35,854 nt of DNA, taken from NCBI GenBank assembly GCA_001642005.1, contig LWCA01000269.1, positions 1 to 35,854 of the forward strand, given 5' to 3'. This DNA is from Intoshia linei (taxonomy: Eukaryota; Animalia; Orthonectida). Both the position numbers and the translations under genes were made by a program. Position 1 is the stretch's first letter; every line of letters begins with the position of its first letter. Below the pieces are notes generated by a model. That model ran no database searches. It worked only from the letters and a program-made list of their open reading frames with translations, and was not told the DNA's origin. This document shows, one piece after another, positions 16,573 to 35,049 of the stretch.

Positions 16573-19500
16573 TTACTCGTCTAATTCAAATTCCAATACT
16601 TTTAATTTTACTTGGTTTTGAGTTTGTATTATCTAAAATAAAAATTTACGTTTTCCAGAAATAGTCTACCCGAAATTGTATTGAAAATTAGGTAAATTAG
16701 TAAAGCATTGTTTTTACTTACAACCCTACAATGTACGACTCATTACAAATTTTGTACACGAGTGATAGCGAATTTAGGCTCGATTTATGATTTTAGATAA
16801 ATTACCTTAAAATACAATTTACATCTTTCAAACAAATATTTCCATTTAATTTTTGTTTTTATGGTATTTTTCAATCCCTCAAAATCTTTAGCCTAATTTT
16901 TATATAAATTTTAACAAAAAATTAATTACCTGGCATTTAAGAATGTTTAGCATTATATAATCACTTAAAAACACACCATTTGTAAATGATCCAGTTTCAT
17001 CAGAAATTGAAATCTATAGAAATGTTTAGAGGTTAATATTTCATTACCGGAAGCATAAATGTTTTTACGGTGTCTCTATTGTCTTCCATATTACAACTAA
17101 GTGAACAGTGGCCATTTATTACTTCATATTTACACATTGAACTATAAATGTTTATCAAATATAAAATGTTAGGTCAGGTTTTCAACCAGGGGCTGATTGG
17201 ATTTCAGGACTAGTAATCGTGAAAATTACATTTTTTTATAAATTAAAATATAAAAATGACAAATATACTGGTCATTGTGAGTTTGCGTATATCGAAACCT
17301 GTAATTCATAGTTTCTTAACCGTTGTGTTAGCACCTCGACGGGTACTATAATTAATTTTAGGGTGCTAGAAAAACTATTTTTATTTTTTACTTTATCTAT
17401 CAAAAATTATAGTGGAATATTTAAATTTTAAGTCAATTTTAATCTGATCAAATACATATTGATGTATTTGATCATGTTCGATATTAAGAGGGTGGTTTTT
17501 AAAAATGTTAATAAAATGCGATTTTTATGTTGAATTTTAAAAAATCATTTTTTTATTTTTTTCTTCATTATACAGATATGAATACAGATTTTTCAGAGCA
17601 CTAGTTCGGTTTTTTGGTCGAAAGTTTACTTTTTGCTTGGGTACACGTCATTTTATATAGAAAAACTAAAAATAATGAAAATTTTTAAATTTGGAAAAAA
17701 GTAGTCACTTTTCACAACCACATGTAGTCCCTGGTCCGCTTAATCTGTCGCTACTGCATATACAATTGAATATATGTATTTACGCCAAAAATTTGACAAA
17801 AAAACATGAATTTGAGACTTATTAAAAGTAGTAGTATTATAAGTTATATATAATATATTATATAATACGATTAACAGTGTGATTCTTTAAATAATTTAAA
17901 AAAAATTTTTTTTAAAATAATCAAAATATTGTTATGAAAGCAAAATTTGATGAATAAGTTGCAACATGCGGCTCGAAACCAAGGGATTATAACTCATTAT
18001 ATAAACTACCATTTAATTTTGATAAAATTTGGAGTTTCAACGTCAATATCAAATCCGGTTAAATTAACAAAAGTTAATCCAAATTTATCAACTTCTTGCC
18101 TTGATAACATCATTTTAATTTCTTTCAGATTGTAAGTTTTTTTAATACTCTCAACTAAATTAAATAAAAGTATTTTTTATTTTATAGTGCATAGTTTTAT
18201 TAATTGAAAAATTAGGAAAGGAGATAGAATTCATATGACGGGTCTACAATTCTAAATTAACACTTGACGTTATAATAATTTTTCGTGGGCCAGAACGGAA
18301 TGTTTTCACTTGAGTACACTACTGGTAGTAGGGCATGGGTTCTTAACCTTTTTCCATTTGGCATCCCTTAATTCAATAAAATTCGATTTGGCACTCCAAA
18401 AATTGCTGATGACACAATTACTGATAATGTTAATAAGCACGCCATTGTCTACTCTCTACGGCCCTGATTATTAATATTTATAGTTATTGATTAGTAGATA
18501 GTAATATTTATAATACATATATATGTATTACCGAATTTTTCATGAGGTATTTCAATCAATGATATTTTATCGATATATTCCCGTAATTTATTTGATATAT
18601 TGCAATCTAATTGGATAATGACAAAATTTAGACAATGTAATATAAAGTGTTTTCTCACTTGATCAAGTCATGATATAAATTTTGTTATTAATTATTTATT
18701 ATATAATAATATAATAATAATTTATTAATAATTATATTTTGTTAAAATTATAAATTGAAAGTGCTGGAAAACCCTTATATTTACAGTAATTTTGTAAATA
18801 GTCATATATTAAATCATACATGGATTTACAATAATCAACGTTTTCGATATTGTATAAGCATAAGAAATGTTGTTTCGTTCATCAAATGTCATTTTAATAT
18901 CATTCAAACATAACACTAATATTTAATCAGGGTTGAAACTATGCTACATCAAGGCCCCTCGTTGCATACAACAAGACATACGTCGCATGACGTTGTTTGT
19001 CAAGGTATTTACGTTTGAGATTTTTAAGGAGGGCAGTCCTAACTTATCTGAAATATATAAATGTATTATCTGTGTATTAATAGTAGTAATAGTAAACACT
19101 GTTCTTTATGAAGATTGAACATACTAAACGTATAAATCACGTTTATTTTTAAAATTTGAAGGGCCTCGAGCAGATAATGTCGGTACAGTACTGTAATGTA
19201 AAATGTACATAATGTATATATTAATGTATACCTGTTTGTTTACACATCCAAAATTCGCTTAATTTTGCATACGATTTACCCCATCTATAAATTAAATTTT
19301 TGGAAAATTATTAAAAATTACAAAGTAATTAATTTAGAATTTCCATTTTCGTCGTAGATTTCAATGCATGTTTTATAAGACAAACTTTCGTAAGTCGAGA
19401 AAACAATTTTCGGTTTTCCCAACTAATTTTTAACAAGTTATAATAATTATAATTATATTCAAATTTACAGTACATAATTAATAATAATAATTGAAACTTG

Positions 19501-22500
19501 CATACTATTGATAGAATATAGTATACATGAGAAGTTCCCAAACTCATTTGGTCTACCCNGATATTTTTCAATTTAAAGTTTTTCTAAATTACTCTTGTAT
19601 GCAATGAAACATTTTTCAAATTTAAATCAAGTATTAATAAAATTATTATACGTTGTGAGTATGGGAACCTGAAAAATGATGTTAAAAAGTAATAATAATT
19701 TAGATTATCTTTATGAGAAATATTGTAAATAAGGTGGATTTTTACTGGTTCAACTTTCTTGAAATAATGTAAATAAGTTACTTACCTCTTTATAATGATA
19801 TTTAACTAAAAAGTTATCTCTCACGGGCCTGGATGCTTTTTCGTAGTGTGAGGGGGGAAACTGGTTTTACCGACTAAATTCCTTAATCCTTGTCGGGAGA
19901 TATGGATTTTGGCAAAGAGCGTTATTAACTCTTCAAAAAAAGGACTTGAAAAAATTTAGGATGTTACTTATAAGAGTAGCATCCACCACTGATAATTAAA
20001 CTTAGCGAAGGGTATGATTAGGGTTTTCTTGGGAAATTATCAGTATTTGAATTTTGGTCGTGAAGAAGCTTTTCAAGTATAAATAAAATAGATTTTTTTT
20101 AATTAGAAAGTTGTAAGATATAATTCTCTAATGAGAACTTTCTAGTATTTCAAGTGACAGAACTTTAAAATTGAAACATGGTAACTTAAATCTTGATGAA
20201 TTTTGATTATTAGTTGAAAAGGAATATCCCATAATGGCAGAGAAGGCCTTAAAAATTCTAATACAATTTTCAACATCCTAATTTTGTGAATTGGGATTTT
20301 CTACATTGACAGCAATTAAGCATAAGAAACGGGCAAAGCTGCTGTCGGTAGAAGAAAAACTTCGTGTATGTGTCTCAAAAACACGTCCAAGAATTAAAAA
20401 CCTTTGTAAAAAGTATCAGGCCCAAATTTCTCATTAAGAAAAAAAAATAAATTTCGTTATTAAAAAATTTATGTTTTTAATATTAGAAGCGTAATTTTTT
20501 AATTAAAAATCAAATTGTTTTATATATGTGACATGCGAAAAAAAATTTTGATTTTAAAAATAAAACATGTCTTAAAATTTTATAAAACAAATTCTGGGAT
20601 ACTTGTTTAAAATCATAAGCAATATAATAAATAGCAACCTCAAAAATATGCATTTTCACGATGAAAATCCCAGATTGCACTTTTTTAAAAAATGAAAATG
20701 GTCATAGAATTTAAAAAAAAGTATAGCTAATACAATTAAATCTAGTGAACACACACTAAAATTTTTAATCTGACAAAGTGATGTCTTCACGGTCAAAAAA
20801 GCAGTTTAGTATTCATTTTTTTTATTTCGAAACTATTTAAATTTGAAATATTATACTGTTAAATCACCATTATATTGAAAAATTAAAAAATATGTATTTG
20901 ATCTTTGGAATTCGTATTGACAGCCTGTCAATGACTTGAACCATTTACAGTGAAAACTAACTATTAAAAATTGTAACTACAATTAGAAAAGCGTCGTCAA
21001 TCAACATTACTCTTAATTATACATATTAAAATTGAAAGATTGGCATTATGCGTAATATTCATTGAGTATAGTTTCACACTTAACCCAAATCGACCCAGAT
21101 ACCATTAGATTTTGACGAGTAAAAATCACAAAAAAGGAATGATTATATTAAAAAGTATATTAATGTTTAACAATTTTTTTTAAAATGCGGTAATATAATG
21201 AGTGAAAGGAATTAATGCTAAACCAACAGTAAAAATACAGCATAGTTATTAACAAAATACATAAATAAAAAGTATACAAATAAATATTTTAACTGTCATA
21301 TACAATTTTAATCTCTAAAAAAATGTACATATATTGGATTTTTGGGTGTAATAATTTGATTAAATATATTATTAAACATCTTACCATAATGTAATATAAA
21401 ATTAGATTTATTCAGTGGAATTTTGATTGCAGGTAAAATAAAAATGTTAAAAACTTATATAAAACATAAAATGTAGACAAAATTACATGCCCAATTAATA
21501 ATTGTTTCACTTGCTTAAAAAAAGAAACAAAATGTCTTGATTGTGAAGACGGATATTATAAATCGCTCGATAAATGTCACAGTATATTAATTAATTTATT
21601 AAATTTTAAATATAAAACTTAGATATTTTTATTTATATGTAAATAAACTTTTTTAGAGTGTCCTATAGGCTGTTCAAACTGCATGAATAGGAATATCTGT
21701 AGTCATTGCCGAGAATTTACATTTTGGGATGATAAATTAAATTACTGCTCTAGTGAATTTATTACTCATACATTATAATTTATATTTTTTTATTTTATGT
21801 ATTCCAACTAAATTTAGGCTGCCCGATTTTTTGTGAATCGTGTCAAACTAAAGTCAAATGTGAAATTTGCATTGAAAAATATTACAAAATTGAAGAAAAC
21901 ATAAAGTGCATTGGTAAACTATGCATTCATAATATTTAACTTATTGTAGCATGCCCCGAATATTGTAGTGATTGCACTTCACCAGAAAATTGTATAGCTT
22001 GTTTTAGCGGATATTTTTTGACTCGAAAATTGCATAAATCATTTTGCAACAGTTATATTTTAATTGCTAAAATTAAATACCATTTAGAGTGTACGAGCAA
22101 CTGTTTATTATGCCTGGATAGAGTTTCATGTATAACATGCAAAAGTGATTATTTTTGGGACAAGTCGGATCAAGTCTGCCAATGTAAGTTGTCTTAATCA
22201 AATGATTAATTAATACGTTTATAGAATAATGCAGTGTTTATTATTTTAGCTTGCGGGTCAAATTGTTTGAAATGTGATGAAACCGTAGGATGTACAAAGT
22301 GTGGTAAAGGGTATATTGTCACAAATAGTGTTTGCCATCGTTTCTTTTATGTTATTTTAATTAATTAATTCTTAGAATGTCCAATATTGCATAAAAGTTT
22401 ATGTGAAAAAATTATGGATAAGACTAGAGGTAGAATTTGGAGAAGCACATCACAATCGTGCATTTGTAATTATGAAATTATAATTTATTAATTTTTTTAT

Positions 22501-25500
22501 ACTAGATTGCCCTGAAAATTGTTTAAGGTGTATATTAGAAGAAAGTGAAATTTTTTGCATTTATACTGAGAATAATATTATTTATTCAGGTTGTAGAAGT
22601 GGCCTCGTTTGGACTTGGAACTATTTATGTGAAAGTAAATTTTAATACTATTTTTATAATTTTTAAGTGTGCAGTGGAATCTCAAGACATTTACTACCAA
22701 CTAAAGAATTTTGTCATCAATGTGATGGTTACTATTATGATGAAAATGAATGTATGCGTAATACTTACTAAAGTAAATAAAATAATAGTTTATAAATATG
22801 TGTCTGTTTGTGTGTAACCATTTATTTTTAAAACTCACAGTCCCATAAATTTAAAATGTACAATATAGTAACAAAAAATAGTTTAGATAAAAAAATAATA
22901 AAAAGTAGTTTTTTTGGGCACAGAAAGTATAATATATTACAGAATTATTTTGAAAATCTGAGAAAAACCAAATCCTAGAATTAAAAAAATTATGATAGCT
23001 ATCAATTAATACATTTATTATACATATACATATGTATGTATAATATACATTGTATATATTGTATAACTTTTTCAAGTTAAAACTCTGTTTTTATGTTATA
23101 TTTTAATATCAATGTCAAGATATAAAAATATATAAGATGTGGTGATGTCAGTTTCAAATTTTATAATGCTATCATCAGTTACCACGAAATTATCATCCTG
23201 ATTATTAATGTTATGTTGTAATAATTTCAATTTCTAATAAAATGTATAATATTAACATATTTTTCAGTTATTATGAATTATTATATATTTTGTATGATTA
23301 TTACAGTGTGTACCATTTAAAACAGTGCACTTAAAAATAAAAAGTTTATCAAAAAAAATTTTGACTGTAACAATTAAATTTGCTTAATAATAAAATTATT
23401 TGGATATTTATCTAAAGTATTTAGGAAAAAGTTAGAAACTTAAAATTATTTAATTTACAATAAATGTTCAAAATGACTACAATCAGATTAGATACATAAA
23501 TCAATGCGTTTAAGGAAATTGTTGTAAACATTAGATAATTCTTGAGTGCTGATTAAGTTAATACTGTTAATGATATTGGTTTTTACGGATTCTATATTTG
23601 AAGGGAAATTTTTATAAATTTTAAATTTTATTGTTCCCCACAAATAAAAATCACATAAAAATAAAAAGACCATATATTTTTTGATATTATTTTTTCGTCG
23701 AATTTATGATTTAACCAATTCATTGATATAAATAAAGTATGGCATGTTTTAAACTCGATTATTAGCTAGACAAGAAATATTCTTTCACTCGTGGTTAACA
23801 TTTCAAAAAATTAATATGAACTTGTTTTTATACAGTTGATTTGTTTTTTATTTCGTCAGTGCACTCATAATATAAAATGTTTTAACAAGTGCACTGTTCT
23901 AAATGGTACACCCTGTATAATAATTTTAGTAATTTTAATTTATAATAGAATGCACTTCATCAACAAATGTAATACTTTCTCCTATTACGTGTGAAAGATG
24001 TATTGGTGGATCAGGAAATTACCATTTGAGAGGCTATCATATAGTTGGAAAATGTTTAAGTAAATTAAAAATTTTTTATAATGTATTAGTAAAATAATTA
24101 ATGTAGTACAGTATTCTCATCACAATTCAATTATTTAACTCGCCATTAATTTCAAATATAAAGTTTTAAGACCATTTTTCAAAATAAATTGTTATTTTGT
24201 ATTTTACAATTTGTATTACAATTTACATTTTATTGCAATTTAACCTTTAAAGGTTTTATCTTCTGTTTCTATAGTTTTAAATTTTCTATCTCGCCAACAT
24301 AGTCTAAATCTCAATAATGGCGAGTTATAGAGAGAATATTGTACATTCTAAATCAGGGGTGTCAGACTGAATTTAGTTGGCGGATCAAATATGAAAAAAA
24401 TTATTAAACAGTTTTAATTAATATAATTAAGAAATAAATAATAACAATAATGTAAAAAAAATAATAAAAAATGAATTTGAAAATGGATAGTTTGAAACCA
24501 TTTGAATTAACTTTATTATTTCGGAATTTTTAATTAAAAAATGAATTTGAAGTTTAAGTTAAATTTGAAAATCAATAGTTACAAAACAATTTGAATTAAC
24601 TTTATTATTCTGTAATTTTTAATTAATAAATAAATTTGAAAATCCATAAATATAAACAAATTCTATTATAACTTTATCATTCCGGAATTTTTAATTAAAA
24701 AATAAATTTGAAAACCGATAGTTACAAAACAGTTTGAATTAACGTTATCATTTCTGAATTTTTAAATAACATGTTAACTGGTGGAAACTCGTTTTAGTGT
24801 GTTTTTTATTTCATCATATTGTGTAAACACTCGTTTTTGCGATTAATAAAATTAATATTACAAATATAAAGCATAGACACCATATTTCAATTATATTATG
24901 TTGTATTTCATTTTTTATTCATTATTCTATTATTTATTTGATGATTATAAATCTCCGATGAGTCTGATCTTGATAATTACAATTTAATGTAAGAGATTTT
25001 AACTGAAGATGAATATGGAAATATGACAAACTCTGTTTCAAAAAAATATATTTTTGAACCTTGTAAATAAACTAATCATAACAATAAATATGTTTATTTT
25101 TCCATCCACTGAAATGGTGACATTTCTAAAACGGTGTCCATTAAATTTTACTCAGTATTTTATGATTTACACAGTATTAATAAAGTTTACTCAGTATTAC
25201 TACTTTACGCAGTATCGTTAATTTTTACACAAATTGTAATAAATTTTTTAACATTTTCGAGCAGCATTTCGAAAAATGAACACTAAAGTGCTTTTTTGAC
25301 CATGAAGAGGTTACTTTTTGAGATTCAAATTTATTGTGTGTTTTAACTAGATATGGACAATCTGTGGTTTTAATCGTGAAAATGAAATTTTTTGAGGTTA
25401 CATTTTATGATAATACTTACTATTTAATAAAAGTCACAGTATGTTTTATAAAATTCTAGGAATTTTTTTATTTTTAAATTAAAGGGTAATTTGGGGTTTT

Positions 25501-28500
25501 GACCCTGAAGATATATCTTTTGTAATTAAAATGTATGATAATGCTCATGATTTTATATATATGTGTATCAGATTTTTTTTAAATTCTAGGTCTCGTTTCA
25601 ATTTATAAACTAACTTTTTAAATCTTCAGTAATAAATTTTTTAAATTTTTTAAACAGTTTTAAATTAAGTATTAAATGATGCTGTATTGATTAAAAATGC
25701 CTTGTAAAACATTTATTCTTTTTTAGTGTATAATTTTATGTAATGGTTGCTACCTGTATTTCCTAACGATTTCTTTTTCATCATCCCGATTTTATAAAAA
25801 AAATTAAAATTTGTGTTTTTCTATAACTATATTTATTTCCTCATAACTAAAATTTGATGCATTAGAAAAAATAGAGTGAAAAATAATTGTGACTACGCGT
25901 AATAATATTTGATACTTTAAATTATTTTAAAAAAATATAAATTATTAATAGTAATAATGAAAAATTATGATATTATTAAATAATTAGATGTTGAATGCTA
26001 TAAGGCTACACCTACACAATGTCAGGTTTGCAATGGTTATTGGTTTAATGCAGGAATTTGTAAAGGTTATAAATTTACTTTTTTATTTTTATTTTATGAA
26101 TGATAATTCCAAAATCAATATTAGATCCCTAAAAATATTGCGCAGTTTATTTAAATACCAGATAGAACCACCCACCTTACTGCAGTGGTATGGACTTTAC
26201 AGTGTAAATTTGATACACAAAATAGTTATGATATTCAAAAAAATAATTTTCCAAATGCTTGTTTTACAAAATTAAAAAAATTTTGTCGAACCCCAGCTAC
26301 ATCACGCATAGAGGGCTCTCGGTACGGTAGATTCAACTCAGTACGTTCGAGTGTATTCTAAATTTTAGATTTCGGTTCTATATATTATAAATTTATTTAA
26401 TGATTAATATACTTTACATATATTTAAACTAGAAACATCATGTCAACAAACTGCAAGCACTATATTAAGCAGACCTGAATGTAATGGATGTGAAAATAGG
26501 ATTTGGATAATTGGTTCTTGTGTTTTAGGTTTTAATTTTCTGTAGTTAATGCGTTAATACATTATAACTGTTTTGCATTGGTATAGTCATATTTTCATTT
26601 GATATGGTCTTGTTTGCATTTGAAATATTATGTTTTAGATAATATCTAATGCAAACAACCATATCAAATGAAAATATAACTATACCAATGCAAAACATCC
26701 ATATAACTCATCTTTATATATATAAAGTAATTTAGTTAGAAATTTACGTCTGTTTATTTATTTTCTGTTTGTTCCAGTTTATTTAAAAAAGTAAGAAAAG
26801 CCAAGTTTTCAAATTCCATCTTTCTAGTACAGTTTTGTGAGGGTAATGTTTTATCAAAATTTATTTTCGAAAAATTGAGTCCATCCAGGTCAAAAACTCT
26901 AATTATCCTTTTTTTAAAATTGAAACCAGTCCTAGACTTATACAAAATAAACTATCTGATAAAGATTTAGTAAATTACGTTTAAGTTTATTTACATTAAA
27001 GTTTCACGATCACAACCAGATTACCCTTTTTTAATAAAAATGAAAATAGTCTTAGAATGTAAAAAAATGACAGCTACTAAACTACGGCCGCGACTTACAA
27101 ATCTATTACAAAGTACACCGGTGATATCTTACAAATTATCATATATCATCAACTTAGATTTTAAATATATACTATCGACTTGTCATTTCTAGATCATGAG
27201 AAACTTATTAACTCATTAACTTAATTTAATAAGCAAATTTTTATAAATGAGTCTATAGTTGAGGAACTCTGCTATATAGCATGTTTAAGTAAGATTTTAT
27301 TATTGACTTCATTTTTTTGGTACACTTGAAAAGTTCGCCATCGACAGGGCTAGGTGCTGATTGTACGAAGTACATAACAGTCAACCTAGTAATAACATAA
27401 ATATATATTAACATAATATATATAAGATGAATTAGCTATGAAAATTAACAATGAAACTTTTCTAGATGTAAATTTTTCTAAAATGACTAATATAATTTTG
27501 AAATTTTTGACTTAAATATTTAATATTGTCGTAATTGTACTGAATTATTTATTATTTAAAATGGTATTATATTATATACATTAACTGTATATTTTATTGC
27601 TTATATCTGTAAGCAAGATTACATATTGTGGTAATCACAGATGTCTTCTTATTCATAATTATTATTATTAATTATTAGGAACAATGTGCGGTGGACCTTG
27701 GAATAATAATTTATCTATTTATTGTTCTCATTCGTGGGTTTATCCGGAGTGTATTGGTAATATTTATATTTTTAAAACAAAATTACAAATAGTAGTTAAT
27801 GATATTACCGTGGAACAAACGATTAATGATAGAACATTTTCAGATAAAGACAGACATTATCTAATTTAGTTTATTTTAGTAATGGAAGTATTCTGTTAAT
27901 CCAAAGTTACCAATAATACACTATGTAATAATTAAAAATATGAGTTGAGGAACTTTTTGTAATGCAATGGCTTATCAACTGAAAAAATGTATTTATTACT
28001 CAAAAAAGAATCTTATTTTTTTTCTATTAAAAATCAATTATAATTATATTATGTATTGAATTTTATAGGGATTTTAGCTTTTTATTATAATAATCATAAC
28101 CTGGTATGTCATTAACATTTTAGGAAAATTTAAAAACAAAAACTTATTTTATATAATTAATAATGATAATTATAGCATTGGATTGCAATAATTTGATATC
28201 ATTAGACACAGAATTAAAATGTACTGCATGTCATAACAGGAAATTCGAAGTCGGTAAAGGATGTTTAGGTATATATTTACGTATATAAAATTGGATATCT
28301 CTTAATGTGTGTCTCAGATTTCATTTCAACTAATTATGCAAATATTATATACAAAAACGTAACAAGGCAGGATATATTATTAAGATTAAAAATAATCTTT
28401 AATATAGACGTTCTCTATTTATATAGTCATGTTTGGACTAAATAAGGACATGTTTGTATTTGATGTAGTCATGTTTGCATTTAATATGGTCATATTTGAA

Positions 28501-31500
28501 TTTGATATAGTCATAATTACTATGATTAATAATAAACATAATGACTATATTATATTCAAATATGACCATATTAAATGCAAACATGACTATATCAAATACA
28601 AATATGACTATATAAATAGAGAATATCTATAATGAAATAATTAAGATTAAAAATAATTAATTCNTTTTTCAACGCCCCCTTGAAAAAATTTTTGACTACG
28701 TCGTATTATATGTATTTAAAAATTTACTCAATAATAATCATTAATCAAATTTTTTTTTTATTCAACTTTAATTTCAAGTGATTATGAAATATTTCCTAGG
28801 ATGACATTAAATATTGATGAAAATTATATCTTTACTTATATAAAACTCTATGTTTGTCTGTCTGTGTGTTATCGTTTATTTAAATAACTAAGAGTCTAAG
28901 AATTTTAACAATTTCATATTTCTATTATAGTTTTTTTTGGAGTGAAAATAAAATAAATTTCAAACTCAGAAACTCACATCTTACAGGTCAAAAACCCCAA
29001 TTATCCTTTTTTTGGAAATCAAACTAGCTTTAAAATTTAAAAAAATATTCACTCTGATACAGATTTTAAAATCATAAATATTATCATAAATTTAAATTTG
29101 AAAAAGCCCAAATACCCTTTTTTTAAAAAATGAAAATTGTCCCAGAATTTTAAAAAAACTTACAAATCATACAGTATCTCCACATTTTACATACAAAAAA
29201 TTTTGATCTCACTAAGTAACCTCTGCACGGTTAAAAAAGCACTTTTATAATTAAAATATGTCTTAGATATAAAAACATTTTAAATACTACATTAGTATTT
29301 TACTAACAACCACCAACCAATTCTGTACAACTTACCTAGATTAGATATATAGATATTTTCTATTTATATAGTCATGTTTGCATTTAATATGGTCATATTT
29401 GAATTTGATATAGTCATAATTACTATGATTAATAATAAACATAATGACTACATTAAATTCAAATATGAGCATATTAAATGCAAACATGACTATATCAAAT
29501 ACAAACATGACTATATAATTAGAGAATATCTCTAACTACATAGTAATAGAAACAGCCTATAATTATCAAATACTCAATTATTCTGTTGTGATTCACAAAT
29601 GACTATACTTTTAGTTTTAATTTCTAAATAATCTTACATTAATTAACAAACAAAATTTTATAATGGGATTTTTAGGGAAATTTTTTTTTACCATATTTTT
29701 AAGGGGTTTTGTAGGAAAACATTTTTTACTAAATATTTTCTAGATGGTTTTTAGTGAAATTTTTTTGATGATATTTTCAAGGTAGTTTTTAGAGAATTTT
29801 TTTTACAATATTTTTATTATTTTATAAAATTTGATATAATTAATGGTTCTTGAATTTAAAAATAAAACAAAAAGTCAAGCTAGTAAATTATAATTCATAT
29901 TTTTCGAATGTATTGCAATGGTGTAATTATAAATGCCAATAAAATTATTGATTTAAAATTAATTAAAATATAATAGACAAATTGCAAAGATAACTCTCAT
30001 GACAGTTTATTAAAATGTGTATAATGTATCAATATATTCATAAATTGATTTTTAATCTTAGCGATTCCATTTATAAAAAAATGAATATTTATAAATTTTA
30101 AAAAGCTTTTAATTTTATTAAAAAATTATTAATCGATTGTTATTACAATTATGTTGTATACCCTTGTTAATATGCCAATCATAGAAATAATTTGATTCTG
30201 TTTGGTATCAACTAAACCAAGATTTTTATAATGGATCAAAGGTTTAGTTAAATAATTTATCAATAATTGCCAGCTTTCTCCAAACGATTGTGTTTTTCTA
30301 AAGGTACATTTTTCTTCACTTCCAAACAAATAATAATTTCTAAATAAAATGCATAATATACATTATTATTGTAATTATTTCAATAAAAATTTGATTATCT
30401 ATTTTTTTATTTAATTTTACACTGGAGTCCAGGGTTTATAATTTTCTTTGTCTCTGTTTTTTTCATTAACTGACAAATTTGAAAACTGTACTAAATTACA
30501 TTGAAATTGAAAAATAATAATTACCTGTATTTCCAACGCAAATTAACTCAAATGCCATTTTAAAGTATTTCAAGGAACCGTAAAGTGTAACATTGACAAA
30601 ATCTTGCACTGAATCACGTATCGTCAAAATAGATGTGTATGATCTGTTTGTCCGATCTTGATTTTAAGATTAGTATTACATATTATTATATAAATATTAT
30701 AATATTGTACAGCAGGGGTCAGCAACCAGTGGCCCACAAAATTACTTTAGTGGTCATTTGAGTAAATATGTAAATTATTTATTTTTAAACTTTTCAATTT
30801 TTATACATTGTTTTAAATATTTTCTATTATAATTAGCTTATTATAATCATTTTAATATTGAATTTTCAGATTTTATTTTTCAATATACTAGAAATTTTTC
30901 TCTTTAATTAAAATTGAAATGTATCATGTGTAAATATTCACAAACGGGGTCCGTATAATTTTTTGGTATAAAAAAATGGCCCACGAGATTAAAAAGGTTT
31001 CCGACCCCTGTAGTACAGTATTCTCTCTATAACTCGTCATTCTTGGGACTTAGAAAAAGTTAAGTAAAAGTAAGAAAAACTATAGAAATAGCAGATAAAA
31101 CCTTAACATTAAAGGCTAAATTAGAATAAAATGTAAATTGTAATAAAAATTGTAAAATTTGTGAATTTTAAAAAATGGTTTTAAAAATTTTTGTTTTCTA
31201 TTTTAATATTTTGGTAAGTTATAGATTAAAATTATTATAATGTTAATATTTCTATAAGGTAATGTATATTACATTAATAATCATTTGGCGAAATTCAGAA
31301 TTGGCATGTTATAGGATGGCGAATTGTGAAGATAATCCTTACTTATATAATATGATTTGTTTGTCTGTGTGGGTTATCGTTTATTTCAATAACTACCAGT
31401 TTTAGAATTTTATAAAGTCCACATTTCTATTACATTTTTTTCCGAGATTGTTAATAAGATAAATGTCAACCTCCCAAACTCACATCTTATGTAAATCTTA

Positions 31501-32935
31501 TTATAAAGCCCAATTGTCATTTTTTTGAAAATCAAACGAGTTCGAGAATTTAAAAAAATATTAATTTCAGTACACTTTAATACGGAATTTAAAATCATAA
31601 ATTTAAATTTAAAAAAAAATATATCTTCATGGCCAAAACTACAAAATACCCTTTTTTAATGAAAACAGACATAAAATTTAAAAAAATTACAGGTGGTACA
31701 GGTGTATCCTGTTAACACACACAATAAATTTCAATCTGAACAAGTGACGCTTTCACGGTCAAAACAGCACTTTAATATTTATATATTTTTTTTGCGAAAT
31801 ATTTTATTAAAACAAAAAATGTGAAATAATTAACTGTCCGAAAAATAAAAATTTTTTAGTATAACTCTTCGTTAAAAATGAATATAGGTCTACATGGTAA
31901 AAAAAGTATTATATTTCTTTCTTATATAAGTCTTTTTTCTTTTTATCTCTCTTTAAAAAAATTAAAACATTGAAAATGACAAAATAAATTTTTATAATTT
32001 TATATTTTTTAGGAATTTATAGTATTTATGACAATTTTTAGGATTGGACTGTTTTTACTTTATTTTTGATATTATACACACATTCTGTCTAATAAATCAA
32101 AAAATGGGATAACAATTATTTTTAAAATTCTTTACACAAATGTTAACAAATCAAAATTAAGATTAAATAATTCACTTTAATGTAAAAAGTAATGTGATTC
32201 CACCTAAAACAAGTTTGGGAATCACTCCTTTAAAGGATTGATAATAGTAAATAATAGTATTTTTAATTTAGATTTTCAACGTGAATTTATTTTTTTGGTA
32301 GAATAAAAATGTGCCCTCGGCAAAGCTAGGTGCTGTTTGTACGTAGTACATAACAGTCAACCTAGTACTGTATATTATAATTATATAATAAACTTTTAAA
32401 TGACTTTTGATGAAATTTTAAATTTAAGACATAAAATAGTGATGATCTTAAAAAATAGAATTTTTTAATATTCAACTTAAAAAAATAATACCATCATTTT
32501 ACAAAAATTTCGTCAGGGCTCCTCATAGAGGGGTATAGGTACAGTAGTTTCAACACTGTTAGAGGATGCATAACTTCTTTCCATTATTTTTAAATGTAAA
32601 ATTATAATTATTCATATTGTCAATAAATGTAATTGTAATAAATAATATATGTTATTAAATTTACTAATTGCAATTAGTAAACAGGAAAATATCAACATAT
32701 TGCATTTGAAATTTACAGTTTAATTTATAAATTGAACAATTACCTTTAGAAGTACATCTAGGATCCTGAACTTTGATTACAATTCCTGTTACACTCTAGA
32801 TATTATAAATGATAAACAATAAAAAATAAAAAATACAACTGATGAATCTTTTGGTGAAATGGAATATAAAGAATGATAAACACCGGTTCGATCCGAATTT
32901 GACAAATTAACAATATTTTTGGAAAACAACGTCAT
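16573..32935 (-). CDS. MEIOB: Meiosis-specific OB-fold ssDNA-binding protein MEIOB; exons 32935-32837, 32795-32744, 30656-30525, 30490-30421, 30339-30162, 19422-19322, 19284-19232, 18915-18820, 18606-18532, 18154-18010, 17141-17048, 17013-16930, 16892-16806, 16632-16573 (about 441 aa)
   Basis: Spliced motifs are collinear with recalled MEIOB: VTGIVI, YTSILTIRDSVQDFVNVTLYG, YKPWTP, LGKPK, IEIYDE..LW, DIKMTFD..TISKTLIIVNP, ISDETGS, KIKWKYLFERCKLYFK. All 13 introns are GT-AG and the exon lengths sum to an intact frame (1326 nt). Confidence 0.9.
20120..20437 (+). mobile_element. hAT (Buster/FAM200/ZBED5-like) transposase C-terminal remnant
   Basis: Reads EYPIMAEKALKILIQFSTS*FCELGFSTLTAIKHKKRAKL...LRVCVSKTRPRIKNLCKKYQAQISH*. 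Confidence 0.85.
20540..20870 (+). mobile_element. Internal fragment of the local Helitron-like repeat family
   Basis: Shares CACAC...AATCTGACAAAGTGATGTCTTCACGGTCAAAAAAGCA with 31717-31770 and 29205-29245. Confidence 0.5.
21323..29993 (+). CDS. Secreted cysteine-rich CxxC (furin-like/VSP-like) repeat protein, about 535 aa; exons 21323-21347, 21406-21432, 21477-21581, 21657-21752, 21818-21913, 21950-22051, 22088-22183, 22250-22339, 22376-22465, 22506-22634, 22668-22757, 23949-24059, 25988-26065, 26162-26350, 26433-26528, 27679-27756, 28176-28268, 29977-29993
   Basis: Signal-peptide-like start MYIYWIFGYLFSGILIA, then repeats such as CPINNCFTC..KCLDCEDGYY..C and CPEYCSDC..NCIACFSGYF..C. Every intron is phase 1 and every internal exon is a multiple of 3. 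The 3' exons (26162 onward) and the stop are less certain. Confidence 0.8.
23304..23915 (-). mobile_element. Internally deleted Tc1/mariner (mariner/maT-like) element
   Basis: About 28-bp TIRs CAGTGTGTACCATTTAAAACAGTGCACTT / AAGTGCACTGTTCTAAATGGTACACCCTG with TA flanks; minus-strand remnant CDFYLWGTIKFKIY...RIDLCI..HFEHLL. Confidence 0.88.
24109..24341. mobile_element. Tigger-like MITE (same family as 31016)
   Basis: TA|CAGTATTCTC...GAGAATATTG|TA with subterminal AACTCGCCATT inverted motifs. Confidence 0.75.
24470..24768. repeat. Minisatellite, about 4 copies of a 71-72 bp unit
   Basis: Recurring AATTTGAAAA..ATAGTT.CAAAACA.TTTGAATTAACTTTATTATT..GGAATTTTTAATTAA, downstream of a hAT-like end CAGGGGTGTC at about 24354. 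Confidence 0.75.
25270..25640 (-). mobile_element. Reverse-orientation fragment of the Helitron-like family
   Basis: AAAGTGCTTTTTTGACCATGAAGAGGTTAC and GGGTAATTTGGGGTTTTGACCCTGAAGAT are reverse complements of motifs in the 28829 and 31336 elements. Confidence 0.55.
26569..26697. repeat. Foldback inverted repeat built from 21-bp subunits (copy 1, diverged)
   Basis: TGTTTTGCATTGGTATAGTCATATTTTCATTTGATATGGT... pairs with ...ACCATATCAAATGAAAATATAACTATACCAATGCAAAACA. Confidence 0.8.
26711..27389 (+). mobile_element. Non-autonomous Helitron
   Basis: A|TC start, subterminal hairpin CTGATTGTAC-GAA-GTACATAACAG, CTAG|T end, no TSD. Confidence 0.75.
28403..28631. repeat. Foldback MITE with 21-bp subrepeat arms (copy 2)
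   Basis: TTCTCTATTTATATAGTCATGTTTG... pairs with ...CAAATATGACTATATAAATAGAGAA around the spacer ATTACTATGATTAATAATAAACATA. Confidence 0.85.
28829..29883 (+). mobile_element. Non-autonomous Helitron carrying a foldback insertion
   Basis: 5' end A|TCTTTACTTATATAA..GTTTGTCTGTCTGTGTG is shared with 31336; it ends GTCAAGCTAG|T. Confidence 0.65.
29348..29534. repeat. Foldback MITE with 21-bp subrepeat arms (copy 3)
   Basis: Same spacer and subunits as copy 2, with fewer units in the left arm. Confidence 0.85.
30713..31010. mobile_element. hAT (Charlie-like) MITE
   Basis: TIRs CAGGGGTCAGCAACC / GGTTTCCGACCCCTG; 8-bp flanks TTGTACAG / TAGTACAG (7/8 identical). Confidence 0.8.
31016..32370. mobile_element. 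Tigger-like MITE (24109 family, inverted) with its right TIR split by a Helitron
   Basis: Starts TA|CAGTATTCTCTCTATAACTCG; the right end reconstitutes as TTGTGAAGATAA[31336-32365]TACTG|TA. Confidence 0.75.
31336..32365 (+). mobile_element. Non-autonomous Helitron
   Basis: A|TC start, hairpin CTGTTTGTAC-GTA-GTACATAACAG, CTAG|T end; removing it restores the host MITE TIR without a TSD. Confidence 0.85.
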
Positions 32936-33520: not shown

Positions 33521-35049
33521 ATGACAGTTTCGCATTTTTTTGGACTAGTATGGGTCACTATTTATATTAAAAATGATTTTAGATCAATTATTAGGAAATG
33601 ATTTCTAAAGCCTTTCCAGGTAACATTGATTGGCAAAGTTTGAATCTTTATGAAACCATTTCTGCTTATATTTGGTAAATTTTATCAAATGATAAAAATT
33701 AATAATTAGGCTTTACGTGCCGCCAATATTGATTCCCATTGGTATGATTGGAAATATTCTTATCATTTGCGTCATAAACCGCAAGGTTTTTCACCATAGC
33801 ACTACACGAATTTACATGATTACCATTTCCACTCTGGACATTGTTGTGTTGCTGATTGGTTCTTTACCTGAATGGCTAGAAGAATGTCAAGTATTTGTTT
33901 TCAAGGTTTATAAAACGTATCAATGTAACTTTAAACTTTAATTTAAGGAATTGGGCGGAATGGCTTGCAAATTTGAAAAATTCTTTTTTTATACCAGTAG
34001 TGATACCTCAATTTGGATACTAGTGTTATTTGCATTTGACCGTTGTATCGCAGTAATGCATCCCCTTAAAAAGCGAATAATTTGCACCGAGAAAAATACT
34101 GTACGAATCATTATAATTATTTTTGCACTGACAATTTTAAAAAACATTCACGTGTTCTGGACTCGTGGACCTGTATATTCCAAAACAAACAGTACTGTCA
34201 TAGTGAAAATGTGTGGCCAAATCGAGCCTCATTTCGAAAAATTTGTCCGTCCATGGATAGCGTTCACCCTCATAACAATTCTTCCATTTATTACTTTGTT
34301 TATTTGCAATATCCTGATTGTTATTGCATTACAAAGGTCTCAAAAAAAATTTATAAAATCTAAAACTGCACAAATGATAATCAATCGAGTACGCCTTCCA
34401 CCCACCACCGTTCAAAAACCTGAACTAAAAATCACTGAACATACAGAATTATTTCCTAGTAGTAAAATATCAAAAACTTCTTTGGACAGTGCACTCAAAC
34501 TTAATATTTCTACTGTTAAAAACAAAATAAAAAATGATAGAGCTATGGTTTCTATGACGCTGATGGTTTATTTTTTAATTATTGTTAATTTTTAATTTTT
34601 ATAGTGTCTTTCATCATCATTTACATTTTTAATATGTGTGGCTCCAAATATTATCATTCTTATTGGCAAACCCTACTGGAAACATACTAATGCGTACATT
34701 ATTCTCAAGGTTTGTTTTATTATTTCATAATCGACTAAATTCAAAAAAATGAAAATGGTTTAATAATTTAAATATTATTTTTAATTAAAATGTCAAGTAT
34801 AACATTTATTGTCTATTAATAATGTATTATTGATTAACATATAAACATTAACCATTTTTATATGAAAACTAGTATAAACATGTAATTATTTATACATATA
34901 ATATCCATTAATAGGCCATCAACTCTCAAATATCTAATCTCAATTATACGATTGATTTTTTCTTGTACTGTTTTTCTGGAACGAAATTCAGAAAAGAATT
35001 GAGAAACATGTTGTTTGGTAAAAAAAGGAAATCATTTATAACGAGATAA
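33521..35049 (+). CDS. Class A (rhodopsin-like) GPCR, peptide-receptor type; exons 33521-33547, 33595-33674, 33710-33905, 33948-34565, 34605-34709, 34915-35049 (about 386 aa)
   Basis: TM1 PPILIPIGMIGN, TM2 D, TM3 Cys and FDRCIAVMHP, TM5 ILPF..CNILI, TM6 FLICVAP, TM7 NYTIDFFLY followed by G.KFRKEL. The first exon is uncertain. Confidence 0.9.

What the first reader, a model, noticed from the sequence alone, without database searches (positions are those of the whole stretch)
19423..30161. A complete 18-exon secreted-protein gene nested antisense in a 10.7-kb MEIOB intron
Seen: MEIOB reads ...MIGILTR (donor at 30161, phase 0) and resumes LGKPK (acceptor at 19423, phase 0). This implies a 10,739-nt intron in a locus where most introns are about 35-45 nt. 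The Cys-rich gene (21323-29993) lies wholly inside it on the other strand and ends about 170 nt from the MEIOB donor. Known: MEIOB is meiosis-specific. Inference: convergent transcription could make meiotic and surface/secreted-protein expression mutually exclusive, acting as a life-stage switch. Automated annotation would probably split MEIOB into two genes.
Basis: partly seen in the sequence, partly recalled or inferred. Interest (0 to 1): 0.8.

Follow-up and report, generated by a model that had tools for sequence, protein, structure and literature searches.

The report
Cys-rich gene inside MEIOB intron
In the tiny genome of the parasite Intoshia linei, the meiosis gene MEIOB appears to be split by a transposon-filled intron of about 10.7 kb that holds a cysteine-rich repeat gene on the opposite strand; this is an ordinary host/nested gene pair that the public annotation mis-models, and nothing shows it works as a switch.

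Summary
The window is a whole 35,854-bp contig of the orthonectid Intoshia linei.

- **MEIOB, minus strand.** 14 GT-AG exons (32935 to 16785) chain into one 449-codon reading frame. Exons 1-5 are MEIOB by Pfam (OB_MEIOB_N, 74 bits) and by predicted fold. Exon 5 ends at the claimed donor (30162|30161) and exon 6 starts at 19422.
- **Nested gene, plus strand.** 16 exons (21323-28268; 467 aa, 68 Cys) form a furin/VSP-like repeat gene with a phase-1 start from exon 2 on. The claimed exons 17-18, ending at 29993, could not be verified.

Caveats:
- The C-terminal half of MEIOB has no tool-based homology support. No full-length orthologue could be fetched, and the joined model was not searched.
- Two single Ns (19559, 28664) at repeat edges show the "intron" is a three-piece scaffold. 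The nesting therefore rests on two joins; I put it at about 0.8 real.

The life-stage-switch idea has no evidence. Nested genes are common in animals. Interest is low to moderate.

The parts
16785..32935 (-). MEIOB gene, my 14-exon model with one 449-codon ORF. Exons: 32935-32837, 32795-32744, 30656-30525, 30490-30421, 30339-30162, 19422-19322, 19284-19232, 19190-19098, 19047-18982, 18606-18532, 18154-18010, 17141-17048, 17013-16930, 16892-16785 (stop).
   Evidence: all introns are GT-AG, phases are consistent and the only stop is terminal. The first 177 aa are identical to the public protein P0001; the C-half has 1 stop in frame against 24 and 37 in the other frames. Exon GC is 0.20-0.39, above the short introns at 0.08-0.24.
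30162..32935 (-). MEIOB exons 1-5, the N-terminal OB domain plus the start of the second OB. This equals the public protein OAF69521.1 minus its read-through tail.
   Evidence: identity and accession. (OB_MEIOB_N 9.6e-21, 74 bits). (Atlas model aligns 166 residues to a 466-aa MEIOB cluster; TM 0.71 by query, 0.31 by target). (the only OB_MEIOB_N match in the genome, by an exon-level six-frame scan).
19423..30161 (-). MEIOB intron 5 as assembled, 10,739 nt, phase 0.
   Evidence: Donor AGG|gtatac, acceptor aaaaattag|TTG.
16785..19422 (-). MEIOB exons 6-14, inferred to encode the rest of OB2 and the C-terminal OB. The exon 11/12 junction rebuilds a CxxC-x8-CxxxC motif.
   Evidence: open frame, canonical splice sites. 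No exon-level homology hit. Identity as the MEIOB C-half is inferred.
21323..28268 (+). Nested Cys-rich repeat gene. Exons 1-16: 21323-21347, 21406-21432, 21477-21581, 21657-21752, 21818-21913, 21950-22051, 22088-22183, 22250-22339, 22376-22465, 22506-22634, 22668-22757, 23949-24059, 25988-26065, 26433-26528, 27679-27756, 28176-28268.
   Evidence: 467 aa, no stop, 68 Cys; every exon from exon 2 on starts in phase 1. (weak VSP and Furin-like_2 hits on single exons). (distal exons above chance). (paralogues on 9 other contigs).
19559..19559 (.). Single N marking a scaffold join. Unique MEIOB-side flank on the left; on the right, a repeat copy that lacks its first ~58 nt.
   Evidence: N runs are rare elsewhere. 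(40 other copies start at window 19560-19573, most at 19560/19561). (other copies share about 58 nt further left).
19560..20552 (+). Composite interspersed repeat of about 1 kb. The part 19560-19880 has at least 40 copies; the part 19879-20552 has many copies. It is followed by a second repeat at 20547-20838.
   Evidence: The end of contig C2219 (39846-40248) is 99.5% identical to 19560-19962, with 2 mismatches at 19701 and 19715.
28398..28660 (.). Palindromic MITE-like repeat, with a second copy at 29339-29546. The N at 28664 lies just beyond its right edge.
   Evidence: inverted repeats I1-I5. (1443 first-look candidates in the genome).
28664..28664 (.). Single N marking the second scaffold join, between the repeat edge and unique sequence.
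30657..32743 (-). MEIOB intron 2 (2,087 nt), carrying the same repeat families as intron 5.
   Evidence: families D2, D4-D10; inverted pairs I8, I13, I19..

Best explanation
This is an ordinary host/nested gene pair in Intoshia linei.

MEIOB is transcribed on the minus strand from about 32.9 kb to about 16.8 kb, and its 14 exons splice into a 449-aa protein. Intron 5 falls inside the second OB fold. It has grown to about 10.7 kb because it holds interspersed repeats and one member of a dispersed family of secreted-type Cys-rich repeat genes (one repeat per exon, each starting in phase 1). That nested gene sits on the plus strand behind a 480-nt unique upstream region (20840-21322) that could hold its own promoter.

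The two genes are most likely expressed independently, in different cells or at different times, and the arrangement is a by-product of insertion into an intron rather than a regulatory device.

Shown: exon chains, splice sites, MEIOB identity of the N-half, repeat content, and the truncated public annotation. Inferred: splicing across 30162|19422, MEIOB identity of the C-half, secretion of the nested protein, and independence of expression.
For: - N-half is MEIOB: Pfam OB_MEIOB_N 74 bits; exon hits at consecutive profile positions; Atlas fold match to a 466-aa MEIOB cluster covering only about a third of the target; the only match in the genome by an exon-level scan.
- The public 187-aa protein ends by reading 10 codons into the intron, which means it stops partway into the second OB fold.
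- Nine further exons on the same strand give an open 272-codon frame with eight GT-AG introns. Total length is 449 aa.
- The nested gene has 16 chained exons, each starting in phase 1 from exon 2 on, and paralogues elsewhere.
- Long introns are repeat-rich. The median I. linei intron is 57 bp (PMC6543705).
- Scaffold logic. The assembler placed the two MEIOB halves in correct order and orientation without knowing the gene.
- The C2219 repeat copy differs from the copy in the middle piece at 2 positions, so they look like separate copies, which leaves the MEIOB flank as the partner of the middle piece.
- The right join spans only a ~260-nt MITE.
Against: - There is no transcript evidence for the 30162|19422 junction.
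- No exon of the C-half hits any family, and Pfam REPA_OB_2 and Rep_fac-A_C scans of the genome hit only the RPA1-like loci.
- No full-length MEIOB orthologue could be retrieved for alignment.
- Both ends of the piece that carries the nested gene are scaffold joins at repeat edges.
- Another contig end matches the start of that piece at 99.5%.
Confidence: 0.7

Rival explanations
1. Scaffolding artefact. The 9.1-kb middle piece (19560-28663), which carries the whole verified Cys-rich gene, was threaded between the two MEIOB halves through shared repeats and really lies elsewhere, for example after the end of contig C2219. The true MEIOB intron 5 would then be a few kb of repeats with no nested gene.
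For: - Two single Ns lie exactly at repeat/unique boundaries, while N runs are rare elsewhere (1 run in 148 kb sampled).
- The repeat copy at 19560 lacks its first ~58 nt exactly at the N.
- The last 403 nt of C2219 match 19560-19962 at 99.5% in a dovetail fashion, against about 87-92% for the other copies.
- No second near-identical copy of 19963-20552 is assembled.
Against: - The two mismatches (19701, 19715) indicate that C2219 and the middle piece carry different copies.
- The MITE at the right join is short (~260 nt) and so abundant (1443 candidates) that spurious pair links would not specifically tie these two pieces together.
- The last 30 kb of C2219 holds no Cys-rich repeat exons.
- The scaffold brings the two halves of one gene together in the right order and orientation.
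Confidence: 0.18
2. Broken MEIOB. Insertion of repeats and the Cys-rich gene disrupted MEIOB. The 187-aa N-terminal product, or nothing, is made, and exons 6-14 are a decaying remnant.
For: - The public gene model stops at 187 aa.
- The C-half exons hit no family.
- I. linei is a fast-evolving, gene-poor parasite (background knowledge; PMC6543705).
Against: - The C-half keeps an open 272-codon frame across nine exons with eight canonical introns, where about 22 stops would be expected at the local stop density.
- The exon 11/12 junction preserves a CxxC...CxxxC motif.
- A protein that ends partway into an OB fold is unlikely to be stable (inference).
- Orthonectids reproduce sexually (background knowledge).
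Confidence: 0.07
3. Convergent transcription of the nested gene and MEIOB causes transcriptional interference, so that the meiotic programme and the surface/secreted-protein programme exclude one another.
For: Only the geometry supports it: antisense overlap over at least 7 kb. Transcriptional interference between host and nested genes is documented in other systems (PMC3192792, listed).
Against: - There are no expression data.
- The intron looks passively bloated by repeats.
- The Cys-rich gene is one of a dispersed family, with nothing to tie this copy to meiosis.
- Host/nested pairs are frequent and often co-expressed in mammalian testis, even in single cells (PMC11694760).
Confidence: 0.04

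Closest known systems
Host/nested gene pairs in animal genomes (a gene lying wholly inside an intron of another gene)
   Same: A complete protein-coding gene sits inside one long intron of a host gene. PMC11694760 reports that nested genes sit preferentially in long introns. Here the host intron is also rich in transposable elements.
   Different: The genome is extremely compact (41.6 Mb, median intron 57 bp), so a 10.7-kb intron with a multi-exon guest is unusual for this species. The instance has not been described, and the public annotation hides it.
MEIOB (meiosis-specific with OB domains; paralogue of RPA1)
   Same: The N-terminal OB domain matches Pfam OB_MEIOB_N. The predicted fold is closest to a MEIOB cluster. 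The model is 449 aa, against 466 aa for that cluster's representative.
   Different: It is highly diverged. The second and third OB folds are not recognised exon by exon by REPA_OB_2 or Rep_fac-A_C. The public record holds only 187 aa.
Furin-like / Giardia VSP-like cysteine-rich repeat proteins
   Same: Tandem repeats of about 30-35 aa with CxxC motifs and about 6 Cys each, behind a hydrophobic N-terminus. Single-exon hits to Pfam VSP and Furin-like_2.
   Different: All Pfam hits are below the gathering score. There is one repeat per exon, each starting in phase 1. The distal repeats (exons 12-16) have only 4 Cys and different spacing. No transmembrane or GPI end was identified.

Membership tests
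MEIOB | N-terminal OB domain matching Pfam PF24903 (OB_MEIOB_N) above the gathering score | tested here: met
   P0001 scores 74 bits (cut-off 27), residues 22-140 against profile 7-128; exon-level hits at profile 42-79 and 80-105.
MEIOB | Second and third OB folds (REPA_OB_2-like, and a Rep_fac-A_C-like fold with a zinc ribbon) downstream in the same protein, about 450-470 aa in total | tested here: inconclusive
   The model is 449 aa, with a CxxC-x8-CxxxC motif rebuilt at the exon 11/12 junction. No exon-level Pfam hit and no hit on this contig in the genome scans. The joined model was not searched.
MEIOB | Overall fold closest to MEIOB rather than to RPA1 or POT1 | tested here: met
   the best structural neighbour of the Atlas model of P0001 is a MEIOB cluster (TM 0.71 by query). 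This covers the N-terminal part only. My own single-sequence AlphaFold run was unusable (pLDDT 31).
MEIOB | Meiosis-specific expression, ssDNA binding, partnership with SPATA22 | not testable with these tools
   No expression or biochemical data could be reached.
Host/nested gene pair | The guest gene lies entirely within one intron of the host | tested here: met
   Guest at 21323-28268 (at most 29993), inside intron 19423-30161. This depends on the two scaffold joins at 19559 and 28664.
Host/nested gene pair | The host transcript is spliced across the guest, and both genes are transcribed | not testable with these tools
   No RNA data. No junction-spanning protein exists among the 1.84 billion cluster representatives searched.
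Furin-like / VSP-like Cys-rich repeat proteins | Pfam VSP (PF03302) or Furin-like_2 (PF15913) above the gathering score | tested here: not met
   best single-exon scores are 17.9 bits (cut-off 31.4) and 15.4 bits (cut-off 28). Only single exons were tested.
Furin-like / VSP-like Cys-rich repeat proteins | Tandem CxxC-containing repeats behind a signal peptide | tested here: inconclusive
   The repeats are shown directly. The hydrophobic N-terminus is visible, but no signal-peptide predictor was available.

The most novel reading that the evidence does not exclude
In a drastically compacted parasite genome, the antisense nesting of a surface/secreted Cys-rich gene in MEIOB intron 5 is kept because transcription of one gene blocks the other. 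This would couple entry into meiosis (sexual stage) to shut-off of a stage-specific surface protein.
Probability: 0.04. Interest if true: 0.6.

Novelty: new member of a known kind. Interest (0 to 1): 0.25.

Why it matters
There are three practical consequences.

1. The public Intoshia linei record (OAF69521.1 / A0A177B7G1, 187 aa) is probably the truncated front of a complete 449-aa MEIOB. Inventories of the meiotic toolkit in orthonectids should count the gene as present, not partial.
2. The locus shows that in a 41.6-Mb genome with a 57-bp median intron, individual introns can still balloon to more than 10 kb through repeats and a guest gene. Gene predictors tuned to short introns then break the host gene.
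3. It flags two scaffold joins that need checking before anyone builds biology on the nesting.

None of this opens a new mechanism.

Tried and rejected
- **Fetching full-length MEIOB orthologues to align across the junction.**
  - The exhaustive phmmer search with exon 5 found only the species' own 187-aa protein and a spurious repeat protein.
  - The word search with P0001 found only itself, and its length window of 103-327 aa excludes full-length MEIOB.
  - A PDB sequence search found nothing relevant.
- **Looking up the public gene calls around P0001.** No record was returned.
- **Exon-by-exon Pfam scans of the C-half.** All blank.
- **ESM Atlas on exon 11.** Noise only (NucS_C at 0.87).
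- **tblastn of single exons against the genome's own RPA1-like loci.** Noise only.
- **Single-sequence AlphaFold of P0001.** pLDDT 31, unusable, so no fold search was run.
- **Pfam on repeat-borne ORFs and on the distal Cys exons.** Blank.
- **Target-site-duplication test for the repeat at 19560.** Not possible: its 5' end is missing at the N, and a second repeat abuts its 3' end.
- **The I. linei genome paper.** Not held in the library, so the assembly method is unknown.
- **The joined spliced models (MEIOB 449 aa; Cys-rich 467 aa).** They were built only in a script, to check frame and length.
- **A frame-0 reading of exon 8 that looked more MEIOB-like from memory.** Rejected because it needs a frameshift. 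The canonical splice gives frame 1.
- **My recollection of the human MEIOB sequence.** It suggested matches across the junction and at the C-terminus. It was used as a lead only and is not counted as evidence.
Full report
**Source**

The window is AT-rich (GC about 0.21-0.35). It is the whole contig C1486 of a 41.6-Mb, 3,520-contig assembly. A protein retrieved with exon 5 is OAF69521.1, 'hypothetical protein A3Q56_02691 [Intoshia linei]', UniProt A0A177B7G1, seen on one contig of 35,854 bp. The organism is therefore the orthonectid Intoshia linei. It is not a human contig.

**The MEIOB side of the observation**

On the minus strand the sequence reads ...MIGILTR followed by gtatac at 30162/30161, and ...aaaaattag followed by LGKPK at 19422.

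- The upstream exons are MEIOB. Stop-free pieces at 30499-30663 and 30420-30542 hit Pfam OB_MEIOB_N at consecutive profile positions 42-79 and 80-105.
- The public protein P0001 scores 74 bits against the same family, whose cut-off is 27.
- The ESM Atlas model of P0001 is structurally closest to a 466-aa 'meiosis-specific with OB domain' cluster. TM is 0.71 by query but only 0.31 by target, so P0001 covers roughly the first third of a normal MEIOB.
- An exon-level six-frame scan finds OB_MEIOB_N only once in the genome.

P0001 equals exons 1-5 and then runs ten codons into the intron to a stop.

**The full MEIOB model**

I built a 14-exon model by script from the window file.

- All 13 introns are GT-AG, the phases are consistent, and the result is one 449-codon ORF ending at 16785.
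- Introns measure 41, 2087, 34, 81, 10739, 37, 41, 50, 375, 377, 868, 34 and 37 nt.
- Exons 6-14 carry one stop (the terminal one) in the chosen frame, against 24 and 37 in the other frames. At the local stop density about 22 would be expected in 273 codons.
- Exon GC exceeds the GC of the short introns.
- The exon 11/12 junction rebuilds a CxxC-x8-CxxxC motif of the zinc-ribbon kind found in the C-terminal OB fold of RPA1-type proteins. That comparison is background knowledge.

The weak point is that no tool gave homology for the C-half.

- Exon-by-exon Pfam scans were blank.
- Genome scans with REPA_OB_2 and Rep_fac-A_C hit only two RPA1-like loci on other contigs.
- An Atlas query with exon 11 and tblastn against the RPA1-like loci gave noise.
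- No full-length orthologue could be fetched.

From memory, the human MEIOB sequence lines up across the junction and at the C-terminus, but that is a lead, not evidence.

**The nested gene**

On the plus strand, an ATG at 21323 opens two small exons encoding a hydrophobic N-terminus.

- Fourteen exons follow. Each starts in phase 1 and carries one Cys-rich repeat.
- Nine of them are densely packed (21477-22757, introns 33-75 nt). Five are spread out (23949-28268, introns 367-1928 nt).
- The 16 exons chain into 467 codons with no stop and 68 Cys.
- Single exons give sub-threshold hits to Giardia VSP and Furin-like_2.
- The distal exons are more than chance: 4 qualifying loci against 0.135 expected, none on the opposite strand of the same region, and 0 of 200 simulations reach 4.
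- Paralogous exons at 28-47% identity occur on 9 other contigs. This agrees with other first-stage notes of one-repeat-per-exon Cys-rich genes in this genome.

The proposed terminal exon is 17 nt and lies beyond an N at 28664. Alternatively, read-through of the exon 16 donor reaches a stop at 28286-28288.

**What fills the rest of the interval**

Interspersed repeats fill most of it.

- 19560-20552 is a composite element. Its first part has at least 40 copies.
- 20547-20838 is another repeat family.
- 23295-23940, 24107-24742 and 25276-25613 are further repeat families.
- 28398-28660 and 29339-29546 are copies of a palindromic MITE-like element with more than a thousand first-look candidates in the genome.
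- The same families recur in MEIOB's 2,087-nt intron 2.

The long introns of both genes are therefore repeat-bloated, in a genome whose median intron is 57 bp (PMC6543705).

**Assembly caveat**

The window has two single Ns, at 19559 and 28664. Both lie inside the 10.7-kb interval. In 148 kb sampled from other contigs there was only one N run.

- N19559 sits exactly where a repeat copy begins. Copies elsewhere share a further ~58 nt to the left, and that stretch is missing here.
- N28664 sits a few bases beyond the MITE.

The contig is therefore a three-piece scaffold, and the middle piece (19560-28663) carries the whole verified Cys-rich gene.

The last 403 nt of contig C2219 match 19560-19962 at 99.5%, against about 87-92% for the other copies. 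That is a concrete alternative join.

Four points count against a mis-join.

- The two sequences differ at 19701 and 19715. C2219 and the middle piece therefore appear to carry different copies, which leaves the MEIOB-side flank as the partner of the middle piece.
- The right join spans only a ~260-nt element, and that element is too abundant to create specific false links.
- C2219 holds no Cys-rich exons in its last 30 kb.
- The scaffold unites the two halves of one gene in the correct order and orientation, which the assembler could not have known.

I put the nesting at about 0.8 real. The assembly method could not be read because the genome paper is not held.

**Interpretation**

The best reading is a host/nested pair produced by insertion and repeat accumulation in an intron, with MEIOB spliced across it.

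The switch hypothesis rests on geometry alone. In mouse and human, more than a tenth of genes host a nested gene. Nested genes sit preferentially in long introns, and pairs are often co-expressed in testis, even in single cells (PMC11694760). Mutual exclusion is therefore not the default expectation.

**Verdict**

- The structural interpretation is supported, with an assembly caveat and an unverified C-half.
- The functional interpretation is unsupported.
- This is a new instance of a known kind. Its main value is as an annotation correction for a meiotic gene in an unusual parasite.

Noticed in passing
window 30132-32935 (-): The public protein OAF69521.1 / A0A177B7G1 (187 aa) is a truncated MEIOB model. 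It is identical to exons 1-5 and then reads ten codons into intron 5.
   Followed up: yes
window 19559 and 28664; G000:C2219:39846-40248: Two single Ns mark scaffold joins at repeat edges. The end of another contig is 99.5% identical to the 403 nt that follow the first N.
   Followed up: partly
window 20548-20838 and 25272-25483: Inverted copies of a ~290-nt repeat (pairs I6, I10, I20) bracket exons 1-12 of the Cys-rich gene. Another first-stage note (s1-728678) describes inverted hAT arms around a Cys-rich exon cluster elsewhere in this genome. This is a possible hint of transposon-assisted movement of such clusters, but it could be chance given how many copies there are.
   Followed up: no
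window 20282-20434 (+): The repeat at 19879-20552 contains a 51-aa ORF. From memory it resembles the C-terminal tail of hAT-type transposase-derived proteins. Pfam gave no hit.
   Followed up: partly
window 23295-23940: A ~640-nt high-copy repeat ends 8 nt before the acceptor of Cys-rich exon 12.
   Followed up: no
window 28398-28660 and 29339-29546: A palindromic MITE-like element with more than a thousand first-look candidates genome-wide. The first copy is flanked by a 17-nt direct repeat (28381-28397 and 28641-28657).
   Followed up: partly
G000:C2317:38071-39364 and G000:C2261:23934-27740: Two separate RPA1-like loci, each with REPA_OB_2 and Rep_fac-A_C hits. The species may therefore have two RPA1 paralogues besides MEIOB.
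   Followed up: no
window 33717-34595 (+): ORFs with a rhodopsin-type GPCR look (a DRC motif after a hydrophobic helix), next to the 5' end of MEIOB. Not examined.
   Followed up: no
window 18250-18470 (-), inside MEIOB intron 10: A patch that looks richer in GC than the AT-rich sequence around it, inside a 377-nt intron. Possibly a small repeat or an RNA-derived element. Not examined.
   Followed up: no
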